From Octopus sinensis (taxonomy: Eukaryota), in assembly GCF_006345805.1 (NCBI RefSeq), contig NC_043016.1:16368001-16432000 (forward strand): DNA of 64,000 nt, read 5' to 3'. Position numbers and translations under genes: made by a program. Position 1 is the stretch's first letter. Each line of letters begins with the position of its first letter. Positions 4,727-63,150 of the stretch are shown here, piece by piece. The notes under the pieces are model-generated. The model was given only the letters and a program-made list of their open reading frames with translations. It searched no databases and had not been told where the DNA came from.

Positions 4727-4826
4727 NNNNNNNNNNNNNNNNNNNNNNNNNNNNNNNNNNNNNNNNNNNNNNNNNNNNNNNNNNNNNNNNNNNNNNNNNN
4801 NNNNNNNNNNNNNNNNNNNNNNNNNN
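4727..4826. other. Assembly gap (100 N)
   Basis: Run of N adjacent to a (TTA)n tract. Confidence 1.
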
Positions 4827-17010: not shown

Positions 17011-18734
17011 AATGTGTGTGTGTATGTCTCCATTTAGTGTTAACTGTCAGAAGAATGAGTTCTCAATTCCACACTAGATGTTATTTGGGTTAAGTGAGTC
17101 TCTTCATGCAATGCTGAGCTTCTCCCAGAGGTGGACAAGATCTTCAGGCAAGTTACGATTGGAAATTGATGAGGTTTACACATTCATATTTAGTTTTCCC
17201 TCTTTCTTTTCCTTTTCATTTTCTTTCTGTTACATCTTTTTCCTTTTTTTTTTTCTCTCTTCCCTTTCTCTTCTTTATTCCTTTTCCCTCTTTATCATAC
17301 TTTCTCCTCATCACAGCACCCTGTGCCAAGAAAACTATGTATAAATGTGCAAACTCCCAACAAGTCCTCAGTCATAACTTGTTTGAAAATCATATGCATC
17401 TACAGATGAAACTCAGAGTAACAAAAAACTGATTAGACCAAAGTAAAACATCAAATATATATGTGTGTGTGTGTGTGTGTGTGATTTTGAAAAAAGAAAA
17501 ATTAACATAATTTATCAACCAATAAGACACGGCCTTCCTCCCTGATGAGACTCAGTGTGCTAACTGTTTCTGTTCTAACACTACAATATGTTTCATCTTT
17601 ATAGTGTCTGTCTGCATTGTGGGTCCTCTGGTGAGGTGGTTATTAGAACCCTCAATTCCTCTTTCTTTCTTTTTTAGATTTCACTGATATCGTGATATTC
17701 TCTATCTTTCATTTTCTTTAATTTTTTTTTTTTTTTTTCTGGTGAGGTTTACTGAAGAAAGCCTTCTCTTCAATTAGTTAATGCTCTATTGAGATCTCAA
17801 ATGACTAGCAAGTCCAGCTTCGCACAAACTGACCCCACAGGAGACGCCACAAATATTTTCAGGCCCAAATTTTAGGCAAAATATTCGCACTTATTCAGTT
17901 AGGTTGAATAACATGAACATTTCAGCTATTTTTCCTAGGCTGATTTTCTGCCAAGATTTGGGCACGATGATAAAAATGTAAATTTAGTGGGTCAAGGGAA
18001 GCAATCTCCCAGGAATTGTTGCACTAATTATTTCCCTTGATGCATGTTGGTCAACCGGTGCTAACTTGACAAAATAATGTTACATATATAAATTTACACA
18101 CTCTCACACACAAATACACGCAGACACACACACGCAAAGCTTTATTCTTTATCAAACAGGAACTCCCTTTGGTGAAATACTAGCCCACCTCACCCTACAT
18201 TTTACCCCTTTCTTTTATGCAGCCACCCATCTATGAAACATATACTATATATATATATAAGGCGCACATAATGCACGAGCCTTTCTGTGCATGTATTATG
18301 CACATCAGTATAGAGGGAGTTGGTTGTGGTTTTTCATTATCATTTAAGTAATAATGTTAATGTAAAAAATGACCAACTTTAATCCTATTCATTTCAAAAT
18401 CTGTTACACTTTGACTAAAAATTAATGCATGGCAGGAATAATTTAGTTAAGAGTAGCTGTTAAATATATCTAACGTATATTTATAATAAATTTTTAGAAT
18501 AAATATGTTAATTTACTTTATAACATATTTTTAATGACTAACTTGCAATTATATTTACTAATAAATAATTGCTATCTACATCAGCATTTTAAACAGGCAG
18601 CTAAAAAATTTATAAAATTTGTTGAAAATATTTATTTAGTGAAAATTTTTAATATTTTGTGAAAATAGGGAATAATAATCACTAAGTATAACTGTACATT
18701 TTCTAATAAAACAAAAATATATATATATATGAGG

Positions 18735-19010
18735 CATTATCGCTGTGTTGACCAGACTATTAAATGTTGCTATATAACGTCAGTGACAATGTGCTTCTTT
18801 GCATTGTTTTAGGTTTCAAATGAGGCTGTCCCTGTAGCAAAGCATTCCCCTTGAACAGAATGGTAGTCCGTCACAGGGTGTCCCATTTGCGGCTGAGTGG
18901 ACTGGAACAATGTGAAATGAAGTGTTTTGCTCAACAACACAATGCACCACCTGGTTCAGGAATTGAAACCAGAATCTTATGATCATGAGTGCAACACTAA
19001 GCCACACAAC
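18735..19010 (-). mobile_element. tRNA-derived SINE family E
   Basis: Minus-strand head (...GGTTTCAATTCCTGAACC...TTGAGCAAAACACTTCATTTCAC) and a tail shared with 19160-19455(-) and 60062-60190(+) (GACCAGACTAT...ATGTTG...). Confidence 0.65.
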
Positions 19011-47809: not shown

Positions 47810-48390
47810 TTATGAGTTAGAGTGTAAATTAATAGGTTAATGGGATTACCTAAGAATTATTGCGGAAATGTACTGTATGGTCATTCTGGCATTTGGATTT
47901 GTGGTAGAATTTAAATGTGTGATAAAAGTGGTGGTTGCATGTGCTTAGTGCCTCGTTATGTTTATTAAGCAGCGTTGGAGAGTTGTGCTTTAATATTTGG
48001 AGTTCCTCCTTCAGGCAAAGCTTGCAGATTGAGCGTTGACCTTGGTAGGGAAGTCCTGAGTCCAGTATGGACCATGATAGAGTATAGGGTATATTTACAT
48101 TTTTGAGATGACGTATGTGGTTGGCAAGTGTTGTAGATTTACTATGTTTATCGTAACTAAAAGAGTGGAGATGAGTGGCATAGTTTTGTTGATCCTATGT
48201 ATATGGCTGTAGAGTTGTGTAATAGGTTAAGGACTGTGCATTTGTAGATTACATTATGTCTTCTGCAATGGGTTTGTAACAGGCAGGTGGTTCCAGGACA
48301 GCAATTACAATTAGGTGAATTTTGATGACCGTGTTCGGTAACAGAAGAGGTAGTATCATCAGAAGAGAGGTTATAGAAGGTGGTGAAAAT
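47810..48390 (-). mobile_element. 5'-truncated Naiad-like PLE: GIY-YIG endonuclease and C-terminal Zn-binding tail, frameshifted
   Basis: Manual minus-strand translation (absent from the ORF track): NCNCCPGTTCLLQTHCRRHNVIYKCTVLNLLHNSTAIYIGST, then STTLANHIRHLKNVNIPYTLSWSILDSGLPYQGQRSICKLCLKEELQILKHNSPTLLNKHNEALSTCNH; same layout as the C-terminus of the 57251 ORF. Confidence 0.8.
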
Positions 48391-48409
48391 TTCTATATTA
48401 TTATTATTA

Positions 48410-48440
<31 letters not shown>

Positions 48441-48441
<1 letters not shown>

Positions 48442-48875
48442 TATGTTTGACTTTTGATTTATATTTGTACAAGTTGGCTCCAAGTCTCACCCAGAGACCT
48501 CAAGAGACAATAGGTTGGAAGTTCATGTTGTTGTTATGCCTAGTGTGCCATATATTTGGGGTTTTTTTTAGTTTTGTACTAGTGAATGTCTAAAAAAAAA
48601 AACATACGAAAATTTTGTTTGTTTTAAAACTTGAGATTACATAGAAAGTATTTTACGTAGGATATGAGCAGTTCCCATGAGCACTATCTTTTGAATTTCT
48701 GCCATTTTGGGGTTTCTTGGTATCTGAGTTAGGTAGCAATCAGCCCCTTTAGCTATCATTCCCAGGGCACCTATGACAACAGGTATTATTTTTGTCTTCA
48801 GGTTCCAGATTTTGCTGATTTCTATTTCCAGATCTTTATATTTGCTCAGTTTTTTTTTTATATTTGCTCAGTTTA
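48441..48875 (-). mobile_element. R4/Dong-like family B, short 3'-end copy (B')
   Basis: Visibly similar to, but diverged from, 51003-51430 (3' UTR and last RLE codons); bounded by (TTA)n. Confidence 0.85.
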
Positions 48876-48899
48876 TTTTTATTATAATTATTATTATTA

Positions 48900-48944
<45 letters not shown>

Positions 48945-48987
48945 TATTATTATAATATTATTTCATCATCATTATTATTATTATATT

Positions 48988-50929
48988 CAGTAGTTTTATT
49001 TTTATAGCGTGCTTTCACTTCACTACCGAGCGCAGCTCTGTGTGCCTTGGGTATGTGCTGTGATTTGTTGTGATGCTCTGATGGTTATTGTATGGAAAGT
49101 GTTCTGCGTAGGATGTGTGCAGTGCCTAGTAATGCAATTTTCTGTATGTTATATGTGTTTGTAAGTCCTGGTGTTTTTGTTATGTATTTGTCTGAATATT
49201 TTTTTATCATGCCTAATGCACCTACTATGATAGGAATTGTTTCTGTTTTCAGATTCCACATTCTAGTTACCTCTATTTCCAGGTCTTTGTATTTTGAGAG
49301 TTTCTCCATTTCTTTTAGAGACACGTTGTCATCTGCCGGTATTGATACATCAATTAGAAAGCATTTTTTTCTTCATGATCTCTGACAACTATATCTGGTC
49401 TGTTGGCCTTAATTTCTCTATCTGTGTGTATCGGCATATCCCAGAGTATGGTTGCTTTCTCGTTTTCTGTGACCTTTTCTGGTGTGTGCCTATATACATC
49501 TTTTTTCTGTTGTTATTCCATAATGTTGGCATAGCTTCCAATGTATGTAGGTTCCAACTCTGTCATGTCTGTGAATATATTCCTTCTTAGCCAGGACTGG
49601 GCAGCTAGAGATAATATGATTATTGTTTCTTGTCCATCTCCACATATTCTGCAGTTACTTGTAATATTTCTTTTCATTACATGTTTTTGGTAATTTCTGG
49701 TGGGGAGGCTTTGGTCTTGTGTGCTGCAATTAAAAATCCCTCTGTTTCTGCTTTGAGTCCTGAGCTTCTCAACCATTGCTGGGATTTTTCTTTGTCTATT
49801 TCTTTTGCGTTTAGTTTAGTGCAGTATTTACCATGACGGGGCTTTTCTTGTCATCGTTTTATCATGGTCCGTTGCTGTTCTATTTTTAGTTTGGATTTCA
49901 TTTGTTTTATAGCTTTTGTTGTTTCTTCATCATCTTCTTCTTCTTCTTCATGTTTATTAGGTGGTATGAATTCTTGTTTGTATTTGTCAGCTTCCTTAAA
50001 TACTGAGAACTGTTTTTTGTTTTGCTCGTGTTTTGCTGCTATCTGGATCAGTTTTCCTTCCTTCTGAAGTAGGTATTTTTGCAGTCCTATGGTGGTTATT
50101 TTATAGTAGTTTTCCAGCTGTATAAGGCCTCTACCACCTTCTATACGTTGTATATATAGTCTTTCTATGTCAGATTTTGGGTGATGCATCCTAGATCCTG
50201 TCAGTATTTTTCTTGTTTTCCTATCTATTTTGGACAGTTCATTTCGTGTCCAGTTAAGGATATTGTAGCTGTAACTTATAACTGGGACAGCTAAAGTGTT
50301 GATACCTATTATCTTGTTTTTAGCATTGAGCTCTGTTTTTAGTATTGATCTAACTCGTCTATAATATTCTTGCTTTATTTTCTCTTTCATTTGTGTGTGT
50401 TGTGTCTTATCTAGTTCATGGATTCCTAAGTATTTGTAAGTTGGGCTTTGGTCTAATTCTTTTATTTCATTGGTTTTATCTAGTGTGATGTTGTTACTCT
50501 TAACTAGTTTTCCTCTTTTCATGTTACTTTGGCGCATTTTTCTAATCCAAATTTCATATCTATTTCTTTGGTAAATCCATGAACTGTCTTTAATAGTGTT
50601 TCCAGCTGTTTGTCATTTGCAGCGTATAATTTTAGGTCATCCATATATAAAAGGTGGCTGATCGTTTTGCCGTAACATTTATATCCGCATCCAGTTCTAT
50701 TTAGCATATCAGATAGAGGTGACAGTGCCAAGCAGAAAAGGAGTGGAGAGAGCGTGTCTCCCTGGAATATTCCTCTTCTAATGGGGATGTCTTTGGTTTT
50801 CATGAGTCCCTCTTTGTTTGGAGGTGTAGGACTGTTTGCCATTTATTCATAGAGTGCTCTATGAATTTTATGATTGTTGGTGCTACTTTGTTAATGGCTA
50901 GTGTTTCGAGGATCCATGTTGGGGGATGC

Positions 50930-50932
<3 letters not shown>
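48988..50932 (-). mobile_element. R4/Dong-like family C, 5'-truncated frameshifted copy (C')
   Basis: Near-identical to 53732-55670 but with small indels; ORF pieces 50519-50842 (GIFQGDTLSPLLFC, LYMDDLKLYA), 49851-50537, 49085-49324; bounded by (TTA)n. Confidence 0.9.
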
Positions 50933-51002
<70 letters not shown>

Positions 51003-51003
<1 letters not shown>

Positions 51004-53541
51004 TATGTTTGACTTTTGCTTTACATTTACACAAGTTGGCTCCAAGTCTCACCCAGAGACCTCAAGAAACAACAAGTTGGAAGTTTATGTTGGTGTTATG
51101 CCTAGGGTGCCATATATTTGGTTTTGTACTTAGTGTTGTACTAGTGAATGTCTAAAAAAAAAACATACGAAAATTATGTTTGTTTTAAAACTTGAGATTA
51201 TATAGAAAGTATTTTGTGTAGGATATGAGCAGTTCCCATGAGCACTATCTTTTGAATTTCTGCCATTTTGGGGTTTCCTGGTATCTGAGTTAGGTAGCAA
51301 TCAGCCCCTTTTGCTATCATTCCCAGGGCACCTATGACAACAGGTATTATTTTTGTCTTCAGGTTCCACATTTTGCTGATTTCTATTTCCAGATCTTTAT
51401 ATTTGCCCAGTTTTTGGTAGGTCTTGACAGATACGTTTATATTGATTGAGACTGTCATATCAATGAGGAGGCATGTTCTTTGTCTGAAGTCTTTTACTAT
51501 GATGTCTGGCCTATTCGCGTCTATCTTTCTGTCAGTTTGAATGGTGTAGTTCCAGAGGAGTGAGATGAGATCATTTTCAAGCACTGGAGGTGGTTTGTGT
51601 TCCCACCAGTTTTTATCATGGGGCAAATCCAGGTTTTTGCAAATTACCCAGTGAATATATTGTGCTGCTCTATCATGCCTGTTGAGGTACTCTGTAGGCG
51701 CTAGAAGACTGCACTTGGAGACAACATGATCAATGGTTTCATTTTGTTGTCGGCATACACGACATGTTGGGCTACTGCCGTTCTTTAATATGTTGGCTTG
51801 GTAGTTCCTTGTCGGTAGGCATTGATCTTGAGCTGCTATAATAAACCCTTCTGTTTCAGATTTTAAGCCAGAGGCCATTAGCCATTGATGGGTCAGGGCT
51901 TTGTCAACATCTGCATTATTTGCTCTCTTTGGGTATTTGCCATTGAGAGGTTTTTCTTGCCATTTATCATTCAGAATATCTAAGGCAGCAGTTTTAGCAC
52001 GGGTTTTCATGTGCTAAGCTTTTTCTGTGCTTGTTTCTTGTATGTCTAATTCCGAAATTTGTTGTATTCGGAATTCACTTAGATATTCCTTTGCCTGTTT
52101 TGTTACTGAGTATGATGCTTTCTTGTTTTGAGACAAGTTTTAAGATCCAGTCCTCAGAGTTTTTCAGGTAGCTGTCTAGGCCAATTGTTGCTATATTCAT
52201 TGTTATTGCCAGTTGTAAAAGTCCACGGCCCCCCTCTTTTCTTGGCAGATAATGTCATTCTGTATCTGCCTTAGGGTGGTGCATTCTATGCATTGTCAAC
52301 AGTTTTCGTATTTTTCTGTCAAGATTACATATTTCACTAATTGACCAGTCAAGATTACATATTTCACTAATTGACCAGTTAATGATATTGAAACTATAAG
52401 TCACGACTGGTATGGCTAAAGTATTGATCGCTTTGATCCTGTTTCTCGCATTCAGCTCTGTCTTGAGTATTGCTCTTACTCTGCGATAACACTCTCTCCT
52501 GATCCTTTCCCTCATCACTGAATGTTTGATTCCATCCCCTTCAAATACCCCTAGGTACTTGTAGCTCTCCGCTGGTTCTAACTCTTTTATGACATTCTGC
52601 TGGTTGAGGTAAACGTTAGATGTTTCTATCATTTTTCCTTTGATAAAGGTAGCTTTTGCACATTTATCGAGGCCAAATTGCCTCCTGATGTCATCACTGA
52701 ATTGCTTAACAATCGCTAGTAAGCCCTGTAGTTGTTGGTCATTTTTCGCAAAGAGCTTTAAATCATCCATGTAAATGAGATGATTTATATTTTTATCAAA
52801 CATTTTATTTCCAAACTGTGCGTCATTGAGCAATTTTGAGAGAGGTATTAAGGCTAAACAAAAGAGGAGTGGTGATAGTGAGTCGCCCTGGAAAATGCCA
52901 TATGAAATTTTTACATCACCAGCATTTAGAGATTCATTGTCACTGTTCAAAGTTAGTGTGGTTCTCCATGATCTCATACTTATAGACAAAAAGTTTCGCA
53001 GAGTAGGTGCTATTTTATATATATCCAGACATTTCTTAATCCTGTTGTGTGGTTGACTATCAAAAGCCTTTTTATAGTATATCCAGGCTATTGATAAGTT
53101 TTTGTGTCGTTTGTGACAATCTTCTAAGATCCTCTTATTGATGAGTAGTTGACCTTTACAACCATATGATCCACGTTTACATCCTTTCTGTTCATTAGGG
53201 AATATGCTGCTGTCTGTTAAAAAACTATAGGTATATTCCGTCAGGACAAATGTTAGCGTTTTATACATAGTTGTTAAACAGGTTATGGGTTTATAGTTTT
53301 TTCGTTCATTTGTTTCTTCACTATTTGGAAGCAGGAATGTTAACCCATTAACTAGCCAAGGAGGCATCCTACTAGGGTGTTGCAAAACATCATTGTACAG
53401 TTCTGTTAGCAGTTCATGGCTCTCTGGAAAGGCATTCAACCAGAAATTAGGAATTTTATCCTTTCCTGGAGACTTCCATTTGCTTGAACTCCTGAGAGCA
53501 GATCTTACATCTTCTACCTTGATACCCTCCCACTTTTGCTC

Positions 53542-53544
<3 letters not shown>
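51003..53544 (-). mobile_element. R4/Dong-like family B, 5'-truncated, disrupted RT + RLE
   Basis: ORFs 52255-53544 (KSPGKDKIPNFW, GIFQGDSLSPLLFC, IYMDDLKLFA) and 51198-52010 (CRVC...H...C, RHDRAAQYIHW, ANRPDI...LIDM). Internal ~30-bp tandem duplication (WSISEICNLD x2). Confidence 0.92.
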
Positions 53545-53580
<36 letters not shown>

Positions 53581-53603
53581 TACTATTACTATTATTATTG
53601 TTA

Positions 53604-53647
<44 letters not shown>

Positions 53648-53667
53648 GTTGTTGTTGTTGTTATTAC

Positions 53668-53706
<39 letters not shown>

Positions 53707-53731
53707 CATCATCATTATTATTATTATTATT

Positions 53732-56084
53732 CAGTAGTTTTATTTTTATAGCGTGCTTTCACTTCACTACCGAGCGCAGCTCTGTGTGCCTTGGGTATGT
53801 GCTGTGATTTGTTGTGATGCTCTGATGGTTATTGTATGGAAAGTGTTCTGCGTAGGATGTGTGCAGTGCCTAGTAGTGCAATTTTCTGTATGTTATATGT
53901 GTTTGTAAGTCCTGGTGTTTTTGTTATGTATTTGTCTGAATATTTTTTTATCATGCCTAATGCACCTACTATGATAGGAATTGTTTCTGTTTTCAGATTC
54001 CACATTCTAGTGACCTCTATTTCCAGGTCTTTGTATTTTGAGAGTTTCTCCATTTCTTTTAGAGACACGTTGTCATCTGCCGGTATTGATACATCAATTA
54101 GAAAGCATTTTTTTTCTTCATGATCTCTGACAACTATATCTGGTCTGTTGGCCTTAATTTCTCTATCTGTGTGTATCGGCATATCCCAGAGTATGGTTGC
54201 TTTCTCGTTTTCTGTGACCTTTTCTGGTGTGTGCCTATACCATCTTTTTTCTGTTGTTATTCCATAATGTTGGCATAGCTTCCAATGTATGTAGGTTCCA
54301 ACTCTGTCATGTCTGTGAATATATTCCTTCTTAGCCAGGACTGGGCAGCTAGAGATAATATGATTTATTGTTTCTTGTCCATCTCCACATATTCTGCAGT
54401 TACTTGTAATATTTCTTTTCATTACATGTTGGTAATTTCTGGTGGGGAGGCTTTGGTCTTGTGCTGCAATTAAAAATCCCTCTGTTTCTGCTTTGAGTCC
54501 TGAGCTTCTCAACCATTGCTGGGATTTTTCTTTGTCTATTTCTTTTGCGTTTAGTTTAGTCCAGTATTTACCATGAAGGGGTTTTTCTTGCCATCGTTTT
54601 ATCATGGCTTGTTGCTGTTCTATTTTTAGTTTGGATTTCATTTGTTTTATAGCTTTTGTTGTTTCTTCATCATCTTCTTCTTCTTCTTTGTGTTTATTAG
54701 GTGGCATGATTTCTTGTTTGTATTTGTCAGCTTCCTTAAATACTGAGAACAGTTTTTTGTTTTGCTCGTGTTTTGCTGCTATCTGGATCAGTTTTCCTTC
54801 CTTCTGAAGTAGGTATTTTTGCAGTCCTATGGTGGTTATTTTATAGTAGTTTTCCAGCTGTATAAGGCCTCTACCACCTTCTATACGTTGTATATATAGT
54901 CTTTCTATGTCAGATTTTGGGTGATGCATCCTAGATCCTGTCAGTATTTTTCTTGTTTTCCTATCTATTTTGGACAGTTCATTTCGTGTCCAGTTAAGGA
55001 TATTGTAGCTGTAACTTATAACTGGGACAGCTAAAGTGTTGATACCTATTATCTTGTTTTTAGCATTGAGCTCTGTTTTTAGTATTGATCTAACTCGTCT
55101 ATAATATTCTTGCTTTATTTTCTCTTTCATTTGTGTGTGTTGTGTCTTATCTAGTTCATGGATTCCTAAGTATTTGTAAGTTTGGCTTTGGTCTAATTCT
55201 TTTATTTCATTGGTTTTATCTAGTGTGATGTTGTTACTCTTAACTAGTTTTCCTCTTTTCATGGTTACTTTGGCGCATTTTTCTAATCCAAATTTCATAT
55301 CTATTTCTTTGGTAAATCCATGAACTGTCTTTAATAGTGTTTCCAGCTGTTTGTCATTTGCAGCATATAGTTTTAGGTCATCCATATATAAAAGGTGGCT
55401 GATCGTTTTGCCGTAACATTTATATCCGCATCCAGTTCTATTTAGCATATCAGATAGAGGTGACAGTGCCAAGCAGAAAAGGAGTGGAGAGAGCGTGTCT
55501 CCCTGGAATATTCCTCTTCTAATGGGGATGTCTTTGGTTTTCATGAGTCCCTCTTTTGTTTGGAGGTGTAGGACTGTTTGCCATTTATTCATAGAGTGCT
55601 CTATGAATTTTATGATTGTTGGTGCTACTTTGTTAATGGCTAGTGTTTCGAGGATCCATGTGTGGGGGATGCTATCAAACGCCTTTTTGTAGTCAATCCA
55701 GGCCATACTGAGGCCTTTCTTCTTTCTGTGGCTGTCTTCAGTTACGGCTTTATTAATCATTAGTTGATCTTTACAGCCATATGAGCCCTTGCAGCATCCT
55801 TTCTGCTCTTCTGGGAACAGTTTGTTTTCGTCCAGGTGCTTGTTCAGCCTTTGCGATATCACTGCAGTAAATGCCTTGAACATAGTAGGGAGGCAGGTTA
55901 TTGGCCTGTAGTTTTCTGGTTTTGTTGTTTCATTTGATTTGGGAATTAAGATGGTTTTCCCCTTCGTGAGCCATTCAGGCATTGTCTCTGGCTCTGCTAG
56001 TATGCTGTTAAAGTTTTCAGCCATCTTTTTGTGCATTCCTGTTAGATATTTCAACCAGAAGTTGGGGATCTTGTCATGCCATGT
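53732..56084 (-). mobile_element. R4/Dong-like family C, 5'-truncated but uninterrupted RT-zinc knuckle-RLE ORF (~750 aa)
   Basis: ORF 53829-56162 (first 26 codons are TAA repeat): NYRPITCL, AWIDYKKAFDS, GIFQGDTLSP, LYMDDLK, CRIC...H...C, RHD, ANRPDIVVRD...LIDVSIP...EKLSKYKDL. Flanked by (TTA)n. Confidence 0.95.
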
Positions 56085-56097
56085 TATTATTATTATA

Positions 56098-56159
<62 letters not shown>

Positions 56160-56260
56160 CATTATTTTATTATTATTATTATTATCATTATTATTATATT
56201 ATTATTATTATTATAATTATTATTATTATTATTATCATCATCATTATTATTATTATTATA

Positions 56261-56302
<42 letters not shown>

Positions 56303-56345
56303 CATTATTATTATTATTATTATATTATTATTATTATTATTATTA

Positions 56346-56381
<36 letters not shown>

Positions 56382-56400
56382 CATTACTAACGTTATCATT
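56085..56400. repeat. (TTA)n microsatellite, 5' flank of the R4/Dong-like array
   Basis: Direct reading; equivalent tracts at 48400-48440, 48880-48987, 50933-51002 and 53545-53731. Confidence 0.95.
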
Positions 56401-56585
56401 ACTACCATTGTTACTGTTACTTCTGCTATTTGTCAGAGCATTAGAGATCGTGGTGGTGTTCTGGGCGGTGTCAGTAGAATGGGCTGGGTTGTGGTTGTAT
56501 AATAGCAGAAGTAACAGTAACAATAATAGTAATGATAACGTTAGTAATGATGATGATGATGATGATGATTACATTATGTCATCAG

Positions 56586-56620
<35 letters not shown>

Positions 56621-56695
56621 TATAGTGTAGCGAGAGGGAGGGAGGGATGGTACCTGGATTTGGAGAAAGGCAAAATTAGAGACAAAGACTATATA

Positions 56696-56747
<52 letters not shown>

Positions 56748-56756
56748 ATTATATAT

Positions 56757-56802
<46 letters not shown>

Positions 56803-56808
56803 TATATC

Positions 56809-56904
<96 letters not shown>

Positions 56905-56959
56905 ATATATATATATATATAGGAATAAAAAATGGAGTCAACGCAGGTTTAAACAAGTA

Positions 56960-57056
56960 TTTTTTCTTTCTACATATGTTTCAAAAATTCCACTGATACT
57001 TATTCAAAAGAATAAAAGGTATAAACAATGCAATCTTCTCTTCGGGAAAGTGAAAA
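56960..57056 (-). ncRNA. Hammerhead-like ribozyme in the 3' terminal region of the PLE (sense strand), CCGAAGA variant
   Basis: Minus strand: TTTTTTCACTTTC-CCGAAGA-long stem II (GAAGATT/AATTTTT, CATTG/CAGTG)-GAAAC-ATAT-GTA-GAAAGAAAAAA. Stem I CTTTC/GAAAG; palindromic stem III ACATATGT. The core has C in place of the conserved U of CUGA. Confidence 0.6.
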
Positions 57057-57250
57057 AACGAAACTTGTCAATACGACATTTTAGCAAAAATGATGGATTC
57101 GTATAGCGATAGACAGAACGCTATTAATATTGTTTAAAAAAACGTTATATGATATAACGTCATAAGTAGCTAACAGAAAGAGTAGGGATATTAATAGTGA
57201 ATGTTAAATATAAAGGAAATTAAAGTCTAAACTATATATAATGATAGAGA

Positions 57251-59773
57251 CTACTTATATGCACTAAAAGTATGCTTTTGCCAATGCTTACATCTGTATG
57301 CTCGTTCTATAACCGTGTTTACTAGAGTATTTTTAGAAAAAATAATGAAAAATAGCTCAGAATTGCAGAGAAGACAGAATTTCTTGCCTTTGTCATATGG
57401 TATCGAAATTGAGAGGATCAACCATTCCAAATGAAATTGTTCATTGTGGTCTTTTAAATTCCAAATCAGTTTGCTGAGACCGGTACTATTCCGTTTATTT
57501 CTATCTCTAAATGTTGAGTAATGGATAGAAATTCTCTTAGATAACTCTAACGATGTGCTTCCAATGTAAAATCGTACTTTATTACGAGTACTGATTATAC
57601 ACTGGTATATAGAATTTTTAATCTTAGAGTTACTTGACATAAATTTAATTCTATTGGGATTGACTTCAGATACAATAACCTTGTTATTAATATTTCTAGA
57701 GGGTTGGATGGTAGTAGCTAAATTAATGTTAGTATTAGTAAATGTATTAATATTTAACAGTTTGTTATTATGAGAAGATATAATTTGCAAGAGATTTTTT
57801 GTGTTTGAAAAACCTATCCTAACCTTATGTGAATTAATTATAGAGTAATATCTAGAATTATTTGGAAAATTCCTAGCAATAGCTTGACGAAACAGCAGTG
57901 GGAGATTAGATTTAATTTGTCTCCCGTAAGGAATTATTAACCAAATATTTTTACTAGTATTCATAGCGTAATTACTTTTGAAGGTGTTATATTTACTTTT
58001 AGATCGGTAATAGGGGAATAAATAAGGGTTATCTGCCTTCATTCGCTTTGTATCGGTGCGTAAGTTATGTTTGTTATCAATAATTCTTTTACGACTAGAA
58101 ATCTTATCTACATTATTGAATTTACAATTAGACTGAGCAGAATCAATGTAGAAAATTTTTTCTGTATAACCTGCTTTGATTAAGGCAGAGTTATAGAATT
58201 CAGCGTTATTATTGAAAATATCAACATTAGCAGATAATTTAGATAATCTAAATGAAATATTCTTAACTAAATTCTTAGTAATTGCTCCAGGATGATTACT
58301 AAATTTGCTAATGTACTTAAGATTGGTCAACGGTTTATGATATGGGAAGTAAGAGTCACTGTGTAAATTAAGGGTAATATCTAAAAAGTTGGCCTTCGTC
58401 AGATCGTCATCAAAAACGATTTTTAAGCCCATTCTACTGAAAAAATTAACTAAACTGTTCTTAACTTTTTGTACCTTTTGGTTAGAAACATTTTGGAGGT
58501 AAAGTAAACAATCATCACGATATAGACCTCCATAAATGTTAGGGAACTCTTCAGCCATTTCAAAAAGAATGTATATACAGACCAAATCAGCTATCTGTGC
58601 TGAATCAGAACTTCCCATAGGTATATCGAAACTATCTGGTGTGTCTTTACGGACCCACAACTTATCATCAAATTTAATAATAGATCTTCTGGCTGCCAAC
58701 ACAACATTAATTTCTTCTCGGGTGAGACCAGCTTTGTTATGAGCAAGCCAAAGTGCCTTATTAAGTACTATAGGATTAATAGACGAATAAAAATTGGAAA
58801 TATCAAACTGGATAAACTTCGTACTCACCTTACTGTTAATAGACCTAAACCAGTCAACTACGTCAAATGAATTAGTCCATAAGCTAAGTTTTAATGTTTT
58901 GATTAGATTAGGAATATATTTATCTAGTATATTTTTACTAAGGATACCGATGTCAGAGCTAGAAGGGCAGATAAGCCTTAATGATGGGTTAGTAAAAAAA
59001 TTTGGTTTGTGATCCTTCAAAATAAACCTAGGTTGCTTAGGAACAAGTGGTTCTGTCTTCATTTGTAGGTTATATTTCTCCATGACTTTCATAGCCTCGA
59101 TGTTGGCTTTCTTAAGTATTCTTTTATCAGCAATTTTATACTTTTTCTGAATTTCTTTTTCAAGTAATTCCAAATAATAGTCTTTATAAAGTTTGTACAG
59201 ATTACCAGTCTTATCAGATTGAACCAACATAGTATCCATAGAATTGATTTCTTTGGTGATGTTGCGAAGATACCTCAGATGTTTATTTCTTAGTGGTGAC
59301 CGTTGAAATTTTACATTTCTCACAATGGACCAGAGATCATCTTCAAATTGCTTCAACCTTGGGTTAGGCGGCGGACTATTTTTAGATTTAAATAACTTGC
59401 TGAACTCAGATGTTTTATCATTAGTGTGTTGTTGAGTGTCATTTTTGTCAAAGAAAAAGGTAAGCCATCTTATTCGGTTGATGAATGAATTAATCTTATT
59501 GACAAGTTGTTTAAGGAAAACATTCTTAGGTGGAATAGGAATGTCCTTAAGAGATGCGTTAATATATCTGCCAGCGATTAGGCTAATAAGTTGCAGCACA
59601 GCTTCCGAGTTTGAGTTGTTGGCAATCTCCCCTGCAGCCAGACTGCTTGGATCTCGGGTCCACTGATAGCGAACAATTTTCTGGTCATCATGTGAACGGG
59701 ATCCATCCAGCAAAACTATTAATTTTGGGAGTTGAATCACTTTGCTGATGTGCAGGCCTATAGTTTTTGGCAT
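57251..59773 (-). CDS. Chimeric 840-aa ORF: CR1-derived leader + KIAA0319-like PKD fragment + Penelope-like (Naiad-like) reverse transcriptase and GIY-YIG endonuclease
   Basis: SLKDIPIP...FINRIRW N-terminus; QFDISNFYSSI, FDIPMGSSDSAQIADLV, GLYRDDCL, NFLDITLNL...SNHP RT motifs; IYQC...FYIGST GIY-YIG; CLLC...CKH tail. No stop in 2.5 kb. The Naiad assignment rests on recalled motif resemblance. Confidence 0.9.
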   Translation of the reverse strand: MPKTIGLHISKVIQLPKLIVLLDGSRSHDDQKIVRYQWTRDPSSLAAGEIANNSNSEAVLQLISLIAGRYINASLKDIPIPPKNVFLKQLVNKINSFINRIRWLTFFFDKNDTQQHTNDKTSEFSKLFKSKNSPPPNPRLKQFEDDLWSIVRNVKFQRSPLRNKHLRYLRNITKEINSMDTMLVQSDKTGNLYKLYKDYYLELLEKEIQKKYKIADKRILKKANIEAMKVMEKYNLQMKTEPLVPKQPRFILKDHKPNFFTNPSLRLICPSSSDIGILSKNILDKYIPNLIKTLKLSLWTNSFDVVDWFRSINSKVSTKFIQFDISNFYSSINPIVLNKALWLAHNKAGLTREEINVVLAARRSIIKFDDKLWVRKDTPDSFDIPMGSSDSAQIADLVCIYILFEMAEEFPNIYGGLYRDDCLLYLQNVSNQKVQKVKNSLVNFFSRMGLKIVFDDDLTKANFLDITLNLHSDSYFPYHKPLTNLKYISKFSNHPGAITKNLVKNISFRLSKLSANVDIFNNNAEFYNSALIKAGYTEKIFYIDSAQSNCKFNNVDKISSRKRIIDNKHNLRTDTKRMKADNPYLFPYYRSKSKYNTFKSNYAMNTSKNIWLIIPYGRQIKSNLPLLFRQAIARNFPNNSRYYSIINSHKVRIGFSNTKNLLQIISSHNNKLLNINTFTNTNINLATTIQPSRNINNKVIVSEVNPNRIKFMSSNSKIKNSIYQCIISTRNKVRFYIGSTSLELSKRISIHYSTFRDRNKRNSTGLSKLIWNLKDHNEQFHLEWLILSISIPYDKGKKFCLLCNSELFFIIFSKNTLVNTVIERAYRCKHWQKHTFSAYK
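59564..59738 (-). pseudogene. Captured host fragment encoding a KIAA0319/KIAA0319L-like PKD domain segment
   Basis: IQLPKLIVLLDGSRSHDDQKIVRYQWTRDPSSLAAGEIANNSNSEAVLQLISLIAGRY matches the recalled KIAA0319-family last PKD repeat pattern LP....LDGS.S.DD..IV.Y.W.RD..S.AAG.V...S.....L.L.NL..G.Y. Confidence 0.8.
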
Positions 59774-59813
59774 CTGCTCTACTTCCCCCTTTATGGATTG
59801 GGTATATATATAT

Positions 59814-59943
59814 ATTTATTATATAGAAGGAGCTTCTACAGGACTAGAACTGTTTCATTCAAAAGAAATCATCAGAGCTTCCTGATGATTTCTTTTGAAT
59901 GAAACAGTTCTAGTCCTGTAGAAGCTCCTTCTATATAATAAAT
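59814..59943. repeat. Perfect 62-bp inverted repeat, 6-nt spacer
   Basis: 59814-59875 is the exact reverse complement of 59882-59943; spacer AGCTTC. Confidence 0.97.
59875..59927 (+). ncRNA. Type I hammerhead ribozyme
   Basis: Stem I GAGCTTC(59875-59881)/GAAGCTC(59921-59927); CTGATGA 59882-59888; short stem II TTC-TTTT-GAA; GAAA 59901-59904; stem III CAG/CTG; GUA triplet 59918-59920. Confidence 0.85.
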
Positions 59944-60001
59944 TAATTTACTCTGCTATGTACCTTATTTACTGTGGTTAACCCCGACTCAACCCGGGAC
60001 C

Positions 60002-60063
<62 letters not shown>

Positions 60064-60289
60064 TTGGCATGCTCACTTAGCCAGCAGGGTGGCGTCATTT
60101 GAAGGCTAAAACAATGTGAAGCGCATTGTGACCAGTGATGTGTAGTAACATCTGATAGCCTGGTCGGTCACAGTGATCACGGTGGTATAAATATATATAT
60201 ATATACATTTTATTTTTTCTCTAGTTTCAGCTCAGAGCTGTGACCATGCTGATGCGCTGCCGTTTTGTGCTACACTGTTATTCCTAAGA

Positions 60290-61790
60290 GCCTCCTCTAA
60301 TATGTGGCACTTGGTGAAGAATGGAGTCTGATATAGTTACCATCATTTGCATCCTCTTGCCATGAGGTAGGTTCATTTGGGACTCTCGACAGGAAGATGT
60401 CCAGCTTTGATTTAAAAACCCCTACATCTACTTTGTGCAAATTCCTCAGACTCTTTGGGAGAATATTAAAAAGCTGTGGGTCCTTGAAACCCAGGCTGTT
60501 ACAGTAGCTGGTTCTGAAGCATGATGGCATTGCTTGGATCTTTGGCACTATGTAGTGTCGTCCCGTTCTAGCATCGGTGTAGCTTTCAATGCCAAAATTT
60601 GGCACAATTCCTTCTAGGATCTTCCAGATATATATTACTGCATACCTCCCCCACCTTCTCTCCAGGGAGTAGAGTCTTAGCTGTTTCAGCCTTACCCAGT
60701 AGCTGAGCTGTTGCAAAGAGACGATCTTCTTTGTGAATCTTCTCTGGATTACTTCAAGGTCCGCTGTTAATTTTACACTGGTGGGTGACCATAGCTGTGA
60801 GCAGTAATCCAGGCGACTGAGGACGAATGTCCACCAGAGGACCATCATGGTTTCCTTATCTCTGGTTCTGAATGTTCTTAGGATCCATCCAGCCAGTCGT
60901 CTGCACTTTGTCGCCATCCTGGTAATGTGCACTTGGAAAGAGGTATCATCACTCATGTCGATATCCAAGTCCCTCACTGACTTAGGCTCTGGGATTGAAA
61001 TTCCCTGTGGACCGGTGTATCCTGTAAGTTTAATATTCAGTTTTGGGTGCTGGTAGCGCAGGGCCTGGAATTTTTCAGCATTAAACTGCATATTATTATC
61101 CTCAGCCCATCTGTAGATTGAGTCCAACTCCTGATGCAGATGTACAACATCGCTGGGGTTCTGTATTTTCTGTGAGACTTTCGTATCATCTGCATAGCTT
61201 GCCAGAATGGCTATCCGGGCATTTGAGGGCATATCTGAGAGAGCCACTATAAAAAGCAGTGGTCCCAAGACAGTGCCCTGTGGAACACTGCTCACTATTT
61301 GTGTGTTCATAGAGGTAGCTCCATTAACCACTACTGCCTGACTCCTATCTTTCAGGAAGTCATATAACCACTCTCCAAGTTTTCCAGCTATGCCGAGGTC
61401 ACGCAATTTGTGGCATATCATACCATGATCCACCTTGTCAAAAGCTTTTGCAAAATCAAGGTAGATTACGTCCACATTTGATTTGTTGAGTAACTACCTC
61501 ACACCCAGTAATAATGTTGTAAGATCTGGGTTAGGCAGCTCCTACCTGGTTGAAAACCATGTTGGGTATCACTCAGCAAGTTATTTTCGTCAAGGAATAC
61601 GATTAGTTTCCCTCTGACTATCCGTTCCATGACTTTGCTGATGTGCAGGCCTATAGTTTTTGGCATCTGCTCTACTTCCCCCTTTATGGATTGGGTATAT
61701 TATTCCCTCCTACAGTTTGCTTGGCAGTTTGCCATTTGTAAGAAAGCTCTGGAAGAGAATTTGAAGGGGTTTTGCCAGGGCATGTTTACA
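60290..61790 (-). mobile_element. CR1-clade LINE, 5'-truncated and frameshifted RT
   Basis: LAKPLQILFQSFL, PIHKGGSRADAKNYRP, HISKVMERIV, QHGF..GRSCLTQ, VIYLDFAKAFDKVDH, VPQGTVLGPLLF, SYADDTK, SRLDYCSQLWSP, LYSLERR. Confidence 0.92.
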
Positions 61791-62199
61791 CGATTTATAT
61801 TTATATTTATATATATCCACACATGTGTGTGTTTATACAAATATATATGAGTTAGTCGTATTTTGTCAGAATTTATGTTCCGACTTCAATTTCCGTCTCA
61901 GTCGACTTCACCTCCATACCCTTGGGTCTATACATTATGCATGCCACATTTAAGTCATAAGGCAAAAATCTCACTTAAAAATATTTTAAAATATATATTT
62001 CATTGTAAGGGAAATAACTCTCACCGCTAACATTTAGAAAAGTGCCGGCTTGTTTTGTAATTACCTCCCTTACCAAACGAGAAACACAACTCTTGCCATG
62101 ACTTGGAAATGGCAAGCGTTTAAATATAATCTCCGTTTGGAAACAATGGACAAACTTTTTTAGGCCCAATTTGTACAGAAACGGCTACAACCACAAATA

Positions 62200-63150
62200 T
62201 GCTACGTGTGTCTTCCGACGATAGCGCCGTCCCGATTGGCAGGCTGAAACTAACGCAGCTGACATGGAAGACCACACATCTGCAATATTCAACAGCCTAT
62301 GGCTTCTGGTCGACTTCCCCTAATAAATCCTCTACCCAGCCAATAATTCTTCACCTCCATGTGCATAATGAACCCTGCGATTCCTGGGTAAAATGCTCCA
62401 CTGATCCTCATCTCTTCATCACTATCCTCGTTCAAGCCGATGCGGCTGCTGCGAGGGCATCGGGTTTCACCTCTTCCCTTTCACCCCCCCCCCAATCTAT
62501 CCGTCATAACCCTAAAACAGACACTGGAGTTCCCGGTTTTATTGACCAAGAATTTCCGTTCCTGCTGCCTCTATGAAGTGCGGTGGTTTAGGTGGTGCTG
62601 TGGCCCATGAACCGGCTGGTTTAGCGGTTTCCGTTTTCTTTGCCTCGACGTACTTCAGGGCTTCTTCCCAGGGTGACTCCCTTCATTGGAATCACCCAGG
62701 ATGTCAAAGCAGATCTCGTTGTCCCAAACCTACGTATGAGAGCATTGCAGACTATCAATTCGATGTAATCAATTGTGGCATGGCAGCCCACCCGGGGGCA
62801 TCCCACCTTGAAGTTGTAGATCCCTACCTGGTCTCGAGGACGGGCAGCGAATGTTCTGACCCGTTCGTCCCGTTCCTGGCACATTTGTTGTAGCTGCACA
62901 CGAGCGACCGTGACATTTCCTTGGCGGACACCCAGGGACTTAACGTGAGTGAAGACTGTTTGCTTAAGCGCCAAATGTCCATGATATATCATTTCTGAAG
63001 GTCTCATTGCAACATTTGAGAAGCTGAAAGACTACGTTGTTACTCGTAATACGAGTGGCTTGTTTGTAGTCTGACCATCTCAGCTCAAATTAATCCCACT
63101 CCTCGCTATTTGCAGCTGCGGAGATAAAGGTGGTTTTAATAAGCAAGAAA
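62200..63150 (-). mobile_element. Decayed Ty3/Gypsy gag-like remnant
   Basis: ORF 62621-63007 LGVRQGNVTVARVQLQQMCQERDERVRTFAARPRDQ...IDY.E resembles recalled invertebrate Gypsy gag (VRQEN.MVARV.L..M.Q.RDE..R.F.ARL.GQ). No pol or clear LTR seen. Confidence 0.6.

What the first reader, a model, noticed from the sequence alone, without database searches (positions are those of the whole stretch)
59739..59807. 69-bp exact copy from the neighbouring CR1 supplies the start codon of the chimeric ORF
Seen: 59739-59807 is identical to 61632-61700. Both carry the same lesion: only 1 nt between NYRP and HISKV where CR1 RTs have ISLTS, an inferred 14-nt deletion. That lesion puts an out-of-frame ATG (gATGcc) in frame with HISKV and the downstream PKD-RT fusion. 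Inference: the donor was this local CR1 copy (or a carrier of the same deletion), so the insertion was built from three templates (PLE, host mRNA, local sequence) and yielded a complete ATG-to-stop gene.
Basis: partly seen in the sequence, partly recalled or inferred. Interest (0 to 1): 0.72.

Follow-up and report, generated by a model that had tools for sequence, protein, structure and literature searches.

The report
Three-template chimeric retrotransposon insertion in octopus
A recently inserted octopus retrotransposon lost its own start codon, then regained an open reading frame by picking up a piece of spliced host mRNA and a 69-bp copy of a broken neighbouring element; it is a clear single example of a known kind of reverse-transcriptase template switching, not a new system.

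Summary
Window 59739-59807 equals 61632-61700 (69/69), and the flanks diverge at once. The right-hand copy lies in its native CR1-like LINE context. Relatives read NYRP-ISLTS-HISKV there, while the window has 1 nt instead of 15, a 14-nt deletion. That deletion puts an out-of-frame ATG (59773-59771) in frame. In an undeleted relative the same frame ends in TGA.

The 840-codon minus-strand ORF (59773-57251) has three sources:
- Codons 1-10 come from the CR1 copy.
- Codons 11-71 are 183 nt of the Octopus KIAA0319-like gene. They match O. vulgaris at 182/183 nt, span an exon-exon junction, and lack a 1,832-nt GT-AG intron, so they derive from spliced mRNA.
- Codons 72-840 are a Hydra-clade Penelope-like element (PLE) that lacks its native first ~5-9 codons.

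The junctions carry microhomology (CAAAGT and ATAT), and the insertion sits in (TA)n.

The best reading is one target-primed insertion with two microhomology-guided template switches, the last onto the CR1 copy 1.9 kb away. Three points remain untested: whether the deletion is private to this copy, whether the third template was DNA or RNA, and whether the ORF is expressed. No other protein in about 15 billion combines PKD and PLE. Interest is moderate: this is a new variant of known chimeric retrocopies.

The parts
59739..59807 (-). Copy A: 69-bp exact copy of a CR1-like LINE segment, out of context. It carries the ATG (59773-59771) and the 14-nt-deletion scar (single nt at 59753).
61632..61700 (-). 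Copy B: the same 69 bp in native context inside the CR1-like element, and the presumed donor. The deletion scar is at 61646.
60190..61804 (-). CR1-like non-LTR retrotransposon fragment (RT plus C-terminal domain), decayed. It has two in-frame stops, the 14-nt deletion, one further frameshift, and then a 392-codon open stretch (61475-60297).
59562..59744 (-). 183-nt fragment of spliced KIAA0319/KIAA0319-like mRNA (partial PKD domain, ORF codons 11-71). The exon-exon junction lies between 59630 and 59629. Bases 59739-59744 (CAAAGT) are shared with copy A.
56926..59561 (-). Hydra-clade Penelope-like element, 5'-truncated a few codons after its native start. The RT + GIY-YIG coding part is 59561-57251 and the 3' UTR is 57250-56926.
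57251..59773 (-). Chimeric ORF, 840 codons plus stop. Its frame has 1 stop, against 46 and 144 in the other two frames.
56690..56921 (.). (TA)120 microsatellite abutting the PLE 3' end, read as one side of the target site.
59808..59816 (.). Short TA run at the 5' junction, read as the other side of the (TA)n target. It shares ATAT with the end of copy A.
59807..59950 (.). 144-bp near-perfect palindrome (69-nt arms, 6-nt loop, 96% complementary) directly abutting the 5' junction. Its origin is unknown, and it is unrelated in sequence to the PLE.

Best explanation
A Hydra-clade Penelope-like element (PLE) inserted by target-primed reverse transcription into a (TA)n microsatellite in an Octopus vulgaris/sinensis-type genome.

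Proposed steps:
1. cDNA synthesis ran from the PLE 3' end almost to the start of its ORF, then left the PLE RNA about 5-9 codons short of the native ATG.
2. Synthesis continued on a spliced KIAA0319-like mRNA for 183 nt, crossing an exon-exon junction.
3. The growing 3' end (...ACTTTG) then paired through a 6-nt microhomology (CAAAGT, 11/14 over a longer stretch) with the sense strand of a decayed CR1-like element 1.9 kb away on the same chromosome. It copied 63 further nucleotides.
4. The end was finally joined to the other side of the break in the TA run through ATAT.

The two coding joints happen to keep frame. The CR1 copy carries a 14-nt deletion that both removes a stop and shifts an ATG into that frame. 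As a result the truncated PLE regained a complete ATG-to-stop ORF with an N-terminal partial PKD domain.

What is shown: the three sources, the intron loss, the deletion, the frame logic and the microhomologies. What is inferred: a single event, the local copy as donor, and the order of switches. Whether the third template was resected chromosomal DNA or local RNA is unresolved, as is which polymerase copied it. The ORF is most likely an accidental by-product: the PKD piece covers only profile positions 6-63 of 84.
For: - Exact 69/69 repeat with the shared scar.
- Copy B is continuous with CR1 homology on both sides, while copy A is flanked by non-CR1 sequence on both sides.
- Relatives carry ISLTS, or 15 nt, at the scar.
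- The ATG frame is closed by TGA in undeleted L003 and open in the window.
- The host piece is 60/61 aa identical to O. vulgaris and O. sinensis KIAA0319(-like) proteins. It maps to L002 53556-53670 plus 55503-55570 with the GT...AG intron absent, at 182/183 nt.
- The same exon junction exists in Argonauta.
- No other KIAA0319 exon lies in the window.
- PLE relatives begin 5-9 residues upstream of the joint.
- Hydra-clade motifs and a (TA)n target preference are described in PMC8557442. (TA)n lies on both sides here.
- Junction microhomologies were read directly from the sequence.
- No protein among 1.84 billion representatives combines the PKD and PLE parts.
- Double template switches that give tripartite retrocopies are documented for LINEs (PMC2104539). 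Template jumps and chimeric ORFs have been proposed for Penelope (PMC3846280).
Against: - Privacy of the deletion is untested.
- No target-site duplication can be delimited, because both flanks are TA repeats.
- No second copy of this PLE family was available, so the native 5' end and the microhomology at the PLE/host joint are unknown.
- A 63-69-nt tract copied from 1.8 kb away is atypical of polymerase-theta templated insertions, which are 3-30 bp and usually come from within about 30 bp (PMC7165422).
- Only one assembly was seen; no reads or second haplotype were available.
Confidence: 0.7

Rival explanations
1. The third template was an RNA from another CR1 copy, not the neighbour. Under this reading the 14-nt deletion is common to a CR1 subfamily, and the neighbouring identical copy is a coincidence.
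For: Privacy of the deletion could not be tested (searches were empty). The window copy and its 73% relative L003 start and end at the same element positions. This hints at a short unit that might be mobilised in trans, so defective copies could spread.
Against: L003 and all eight protein relatives lack the deletion. The deletion destroys the RT frame, and by established knowledge LINEs are strongly cis-preferential, so deleted copies should rarely propagate. Exact 69/69 identity, the same strand and a distance of 1.9 kb are most simply explained by proximity.
Confidence: 0.12
2. Two separate events occurred. A PKD-PLE chimera inserted first. A later break at its 5' junction was then repaired with a templated insertion copied from the CR1 neighbour.
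For: Templated insertions at repaired breaks are common (PMC7165422). Copy A has 0/69 differences, whereas the host piece has 1/183.
Against: The CAAAGT overlap sits exactly at the end of the host-derived cDNA, as expected if that end primed the copying. One difference in 183 nt against none in 69 nt carries no statistical weight. This reading also needs an extra break at the same nucleotide.
Confidence: 0.08
3. Co-transcription rather than intermolecular switching. The source PLE sat in a KIAA0319 intron, and a partly spliced host pre-mRNA carrying it was the template, with an intramolecular jump from the PLE back to exon B.
For: In Argonauta hians a sense-oriented Hydra-type PLE lies in the intron immediately after the homologous exon B (L001 70381-72723).
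Against: The O. vulgaris gene locus L002 contains no PLE-like sequence at all. The Argonauta element is only about 33% identical to the window's PLE. There is no GT at the host side of the joint, so splicing cannot have made it.
Confidence: 0.05
4. Assembly artefact: the 69-bp duplication or the joints are mis-assembly.
For: The region is rich in repeats and TA, and only one assembly was seen.
Against: Both copies have unique flanks, and the nearest gap is 55 kb away. The chimera keeps one 840-codon frame across both joints. A chimeric read would not produce precise intron loss together with microhomology joints.
Confidence: 0.04

Closest known systems
Bipartite and tripartite chimeric retrocopies made by LINE reverse-transcriptase template switching (mammalian and Magnaporthe chimeras; PMC2104539)
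   Same: Several transcripts are fused head-to-tail in one orientation, with the retroelement at the 3' end. They are formed by one or two template switches during target-primed reverse transcription.
   Different: Here the enzyme is a PLE (GIY-YIG) rather than a LINE. The switches occur at internal positions with 4-6-nt microhomology. The most 5' segment matches a defective element 1.9 kb from the insertion site rather than an abundant cellular RNA. The product is an intact fused ORF. No flanking duplication can be read, because the target is (TA)n.
Hydra clade of C-terminal-endonuclease Penelope-like elements (PMC8557442)
   Same: It has an RW(K) motif, DKT in place of DKG, a C-terminal GIY-YIG with CxxC and CxH around the conserved E and N, insertion into (TA)n, and a mollusc host.
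   Different: The window copy has lost the four cysteines of the CxCX5C linker that its relatives keep. It has no pseudo-LTR and no detectable hammerhead ribozyme. Its native N-terminus is replaced by foreign sequence.
Penelope capture of foreign coding sequence and host genes in Adineta vaga (PMC3846280)
   Same: PLE ORFs extended by foreign coding segments have been attributed to template jumps. Other shared features are AT-rich simple-repeat targets and palindromes at 5' junctions.
   Different: In A. vaga the captures are N-rich internal segments, or whole intron-containing genes between pseudo-LTRs. Here the capture is a short intron-less mRNA piece plus local filler at the 5' end.
Templated insertions of polymerase-theta-mediated end joining (PMC7165422)
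   Same: The insertion is a direct repeat of flanking sequence bounded by microhomology at both ends, as expected from aborted synthesis on the other resected end.
   Different: Typical tracts are 3-30 bp copied from within about 30 bp of the break. This one is 69 bp copied from 1.8 kb away.
LINE-1 5' transduction (from my own knowledge)
   Same: Extra non-element sequence lies at the 5' end of a new insertion.
   Different: Transduced sequence is contiguous genomic flank of the source copy. Here the extra sequence is a spliced mRNA fragment plus a fragment that matches the target neighbourhood.

Membership tests
Hydra-clade Penelope-like element | N-terminal RWK motif in place of GxKF/Y | tested here: met
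   The alignment column has an invariant R102-W103. Relatives read RWK and the window reads RWL. The criterion comes from PMC8557442.
Hydra-clade Penelope-like element | DKG motif modified to DKT | tested here: met
   D187-K188-T189 is invariant across 12 sequences, including the window.
Hydra-clade Penelope-like element | C-terminal GIY-YIG endonuclease, with CxxC and CxH flanking the conserved E and N | tested here: met
   Y723, Y736, G738, R747, H751, C800, C803, E806, N819, C828 and H830 are conserved in the window ORF. Pfam itself gives no RT or GIY-YIG hit, and a profile of the alignment finds nothing in the PDB. Membership therefore rests on motifs and homologues only.
Hydra-clade Penelope-like element | Linker with CxCX5C motif | tested here: not met
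   Relatives have CNCRxxxxxC. The window has VSEVNPNRIKF with no cysteine.
Hydra-clade Penelope-like element | Insertion into (TA)n | tested here: met
   (TA)120 lies at the 3' end and a TA run lies at the 5' junction.
Hydra-clade Penelope-like element | Hammerhead ribozyme motif / pseudo-LTR | tested here: not met
   Rfam gives no hammerhead match at E<=1 in 55500-62500. No repeat of the 3' UTR is found. Both are expected for a 5'-truncated copy.
CR1-like non-LTR retrotransposon | LINE-type RT with the NYRP[IV]SLTS motif and a conserved C-terminal domain | tested here: met
   Pfam RVT_1 scores E=7e-17. There are 5,463 homologues, the best at 71% and 61% identity, one of them from Argonauta. 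See also the alignment.
CR1-like non-LTR retrotransposon | Assignment to the CR1 clade rather than Jockey, L2 or Rex1 | not tested
   No reference set or phylogeny was available. One homologue is named 'X-element' by its source.
KIAA0319-like PKD domain | Match to the K319L-like PKD profile | tested here: inconclusive
   PF22352 scores 24 bits against a 27-bit cut-off and covers only profile positions 6-63 of 84. The PDB AAVR PKD matches at E=7.5e-11. The piece is a fragment, not a whole domain.
KIAA0319-like PKD domain | Derivation from the host gene's spliced transcript | tested here: met
   182/183 nt match two exons of the O. vulgaris gene, with the 1,832-nt GT-AG intron absent.
Template-switch chimeric retrocopy | Parts colinear in one orientation, with the retroelement 3'-most | tested here: met
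Template-switch chimeric retrocopy | The whole chimera flanked by one target-site duplication | tested here: inconclusive
   Both flanks are TA repeats.
Polymerase-theta templated insertion | Microhomology at both ends of a repeat of flanking DNA | tested here: met
   CAAAGT and ATAT.
Polymerase-theta templated insertion | Tract of 3-30 bp templated within about 30 bp of the break | tested here: not met
   The tract is 69 bp and lies 1,893 bp away, compared with PMC7165422.

The most novel reading that the evidence does not exclude
The PLE reverse transcriptase itself carried out serial microhomology-guided switches from its own RNA to a host mRNA and then onto resected chromosomal DNA next to the target. 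The resulting PKD-RT-endonuclease ORF is transcribed and translated, or is even still mobile. This would be a retrotransposon-driven route to new chimeric genes in cephalopods.
Probability: 0.1. Interest if true: 0.7.

Novelty: new variant of a known kind. Interest (0 to 1): 0.45.

Why it matters
This locus records at nucleotide resolution how a Penelope-like element resolves its 5' end, which is the least understood step of PLE integration. The record shows two successive internal template switches with microhomology, one onto a spliced host mRNA and one onto sequence that matches the immediate chromosomal neighbourhood. It also shows how three non-functional pieces can combine by chance into a long intact ORF: a truncated element, a domain fragment and a frameshifted relic. 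That bears on exon shuffling and de novo gene birth in TE-rich cephalopod genomes. It is a single locus with no evidence of expression, so its value is as a worked example and a lead for a genome-wide survey.

Tried and rejected
- Target-site duplication: rejected. Copy B is continuous with CR1 homology on both sides, and copy A has none on either side.
- PKD piece as an in-situ exon of the host gene: rejected. The piece crosses an exon junction without the intron, its ends lie inside exons, and no other exon is in the window.
- Fusion made by splicing: rejected. There is no GT at the joint.
- PKD as a normal part of this PLE family: not supported. All PLE relatives start 5-9 residues before the joint, and none of 1,642 hits combines both parts.
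- Palindrome as an inverted PLE copy or pseudo-LTR: no similarity to the PLE. Its Rfam miRNA-model hits are all far below gathering scores.
- Searches that led nowhere:
  - The 112-aa N-terminal word-index search found nothing even though 98% matches exist, so that negative result is uninformative.
  - Exact-product look-ups of the 840-, 392- and 777-aa ORFs returned nothing.
  - The JGI metagenome scan for the deletion junction, with or without the deletion, returned nothing.
  - No DNA was returned for O. sinensis or for the second O. vulgaris gene model, because the gene ranges exceed 100 kb.
  - No copy of this CR1 or PLE family was found in L001 or L002.
Full report
**Observation.** Window 59739-59807 is identical to 61632-61700: 69/69 nt, direct orientation, 1,893 bp apart. 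Identity ends abruptly on both sides; the next 8 nt on one side match 5/8. A self-BLAST finds no third copy in the window. At 33.6% GC I calculate about 1e-29 chance exact 69-mers among all position pairs. The only assembly gap is at 4727-4826.

**The donor context.** On the minus strand, 61804-60190 is a decayed CR1-like non-LTR retrotransposon.
- Pfam RVT_1 scores E=7e-17.
- It has thousands of homologues. The best are a 71%-identical protein from an ENA metagenome contig and a 61%-identical protein from Argonauta hians.
- Copy B is continuous with this homology on both sides.
- At the scar the window reads CCT-g-CAC (NYRP, one nucleotide, HISK). Eight related proteins have [IV][SV]LTS there. 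The 73%-identical DNA copy L003 has 15 nt there.
- The lesion is therefore a net 14-nt deletion, at 61646 in copy B and 59753 in copy A.
- The element also carries two in-frame stops and another frameshift, so it is older than the event discussed here.

**The frame logic.** The ATG at 59773-59771 is out of frame with the RT upstream.
- In undeleted L003 that frame reads MQKTIGLSL and then stops at a TGA inside the ISLTS codons.
- The deletion removes that stop and joins the ATG frame to the native HISKV frame.
- In copy B this gives only a 55-codon ORF. In copy A it opens into 840 codons.
- The ORF frame has one stop, the terminal one. The other two frames have 46 and 144.
- From composition, the chance of 840 open codons is about 7e-29.

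**The middle segment is spliced host mRNA.** ORF residues 11-71 are 60/61 identical to KIAA0319 / KIAA0319-like proteins of Octopus vulgaris and O. sinensis, and 80% identical to that of Argonauta. They match the K319L-like PKD profile only partly: positions 6-63 of 84, at 24 bits against a 27-bit cut-off. They also match solved AAVR PKD domains.
- On the O. vulgaris gene locus (L002), window 59744-59562 aligns as 53556-53670 (100%) plus 55503-55570 (one mismatch, AAC to AGC).
- The 1,832 nt between those two blocks begin with GT, end with AG, and are absent from the window.
- The same exon boundary (…SLAAG|xIANN…) exists in Argonauta, with a 1.9-kb intron.
- Both ends of the fragment lie inside exons, and no other KIAA0319 exon is in the window.
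- This is a retro-copied piece of mature mRNA, not an exon in place and not a DNA-level exon capture.
- The near-identity also places the window in O. vulgaris/sinensis or a very close relative, and makes the event recent.

**The 3' segment.** Residues 72-840 align over their whole length with about 80 proteins of 700-760 aa, at 28-39% identity.
- These proteins begin M-x(7)-SLKDIPIP. The window enters at NASLKDIPIP, so the native start codon and about 5-9 codons are missing.
- The exhaustive search confirms this: PLE hits align from their residue 6-10 to query residue 71-73.
- The motifs match the Hydra clade of C-terminal-endonuclease Penelope-like elements described in PMC8557442: RW(K), DKT instead of DKG, GIY-YIG with CxxC and CxH around the conserved E and N, and a preference for (TA)n targets.
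- Three features depart from that description. The window copy has lost all four cysteines of the CxCX5C linker. No hammerhead ribozyme was detected. No pseudo-LTR was detected.
- The 3' UTR ends at about 56926 against a (TA)120 array, and a short TA run lies at the 5' junction. The target was therefore a TA microsatellite, and no target-site duplication can be read.

**Junctions.**
- CR1/host: CAAAGT is shared (59744-59739), and 5 of the next 8 nt also match.
- Flank/CR1: ATAT is shared.
- Host/PLE: identity to the host ends after ...AGATATAT. Any microhomology there cannot be judged without a PLE consensus.
- The AAA-GT overlap is in codon phase in both the CR1 and the host reading frames, and the host/PLE joint is also in frame. 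Two one-in-three coincidences therefore occurred, in addition to the frame effect of the deletion.

**Mechanism.** The simplest account is one target-primed insertion.
1. The first-strand cDNA grows in the plus-strand direction from about 56926.
2. It leaves the PLE RNA near its 5' end and copies 183 nt of a KIAA0319-like mRNA.
3. It then pairs by its last 6 nt with the minus (sense) strand of the CR1 copy and copies 63 nt more.
4. It is finally joined in the TA run.

The direct orientation and the position of the donor on the far side of the break are what is expected if the other, resected end served as template. However, the tract is longer and more distant than is typical of polymerase-theta scars (PMC7165422). 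A local RNA would give the same product. I therefore leave the third template (DNA or RNA) and the polymerase open. Double switches giving tripartite retrocopies are known for LINEs (PMC2104539). Template jumps, chimeric ORFs, AT-rich targets and junction palindromes have been discussed for Penelope (PMC3846280).

**Alternatives.**
- A target-site duplication is excluded by the contexts of the two copies.
- An in-situ exon and a splicing-made fusion are excluded by the intron loss, the intra-exon ends and the lack of a GT.
- A family-wide PKD N-terminus is not supported. Among 1,642 significant hits in 1.84 billion representatives, PKD proteins match residues ~10-72 and PLEs match ~71-259, and none matches both.
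- Co-transcription from a PLE inside the host gene is suggested only by an unrelated (33% identical) Hydra-type PLE in the corresponding Argonauta intron. The O. vulgaris locus has none.
- A non-local CR1 donor remains possible, because I could not survey other genomic copies. Against it stand three points: the absence of the deletion in every relative seen, the cis-preference of LINEs (my own knowledge), and proximity.

**Function.** Nothing here shows expression.
- The PLE promoter region is gone.
- The PKD piece lacks about a quarter of the domain.
- The linker cysteines are lost.
I regard the ORF as an accidental product of a very recent insertion. Expression and activity are worth testing but are not expected.

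**Verdict.** One key test, privacy of the deletion, is still open. The locus is a new variant of a known kind (template-switch chimeric retrocopies) and is of moderate interest.

Noticed in passing
window 59807-59950: A 144-bp near-perfect palindrome (69-nt arms, 6-nt loop, 96% complementary) lies directly against the 5' junction of the chimeric insertion. There is no other copy in the window, L001 or L002, and it gives only sub-threshold miRNA-model hits. Palindromes at PLE 5' junctions are mentioned in PMC3846280.
   Followed up: partly
L001 70381-72723 (+): The Argonauta hians KIAA0319L gene carries a sense-oriented Hydra-type PLE with a long open frame. It sits in the intron immediately after the exon homologous to the captured exon B. 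The O. vulgaris locus L002 has no PLE.
   Followed up: partly
L002 about 15100-46500: The O. vulgaris KIAA0319 gene model contains three to four tandem blocks of about 10.44 kb that repeat the same PKD exons (for example 15914, 26354 and 36785). This is either a real tandem duplication or an assembly or annotation effect.
   Followed up: no
window 47900-61804, minus strand: This stretch is a nest of retroelement coding sequences, all on the minus strand: a PLE endonuclease remnant (~47913-48330), LINE RT ORFs (51198-53715), a 777-codon intact LINE RT ORF (53829-56162), the PLE, and the CR1-like element.
   Followed up: partly
window 56084-56386: A (TTA)102 microsatellite overlaps the start of the 777-codon RT ORF and gives it a poly-isoleucine N-terminus.
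   Followed up: no
window 60190-61804 and L003 166-1790: The CR1-like copy and its 73%-identical relative from an ENA metagenome contig begin and end at the same element positions, and both are flanked by TA repeats. This may be a roughly 1.6-kb subfamily unit rather than two independent 5' truncations.
   Followed up: partly
window 57560-57700 (ORF residues ~690-740): The window PLE has an asparagine-rich linker in which all four cysteines of the CxCX5C motif are replaced. A relative (P0122) has a long N-rich insertion at the same place, recalling the N-rich captures in rotifer Penelope (PMC3846280).
   Followed up: no
window 59950-60200 and 18717-18826: The sequence between the palindrome and the CR1 3' end shares a 110-nt stretch at 72% identity with another place in the window. 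It is probably an unclassified short repeat.
   Followed up: no
P0239: One PLE-type representative protein has a roughly 240-residue N-terminal extension before the conserved PLE start. It may be another captured N-terminus in a different genome.
   Followed up: no
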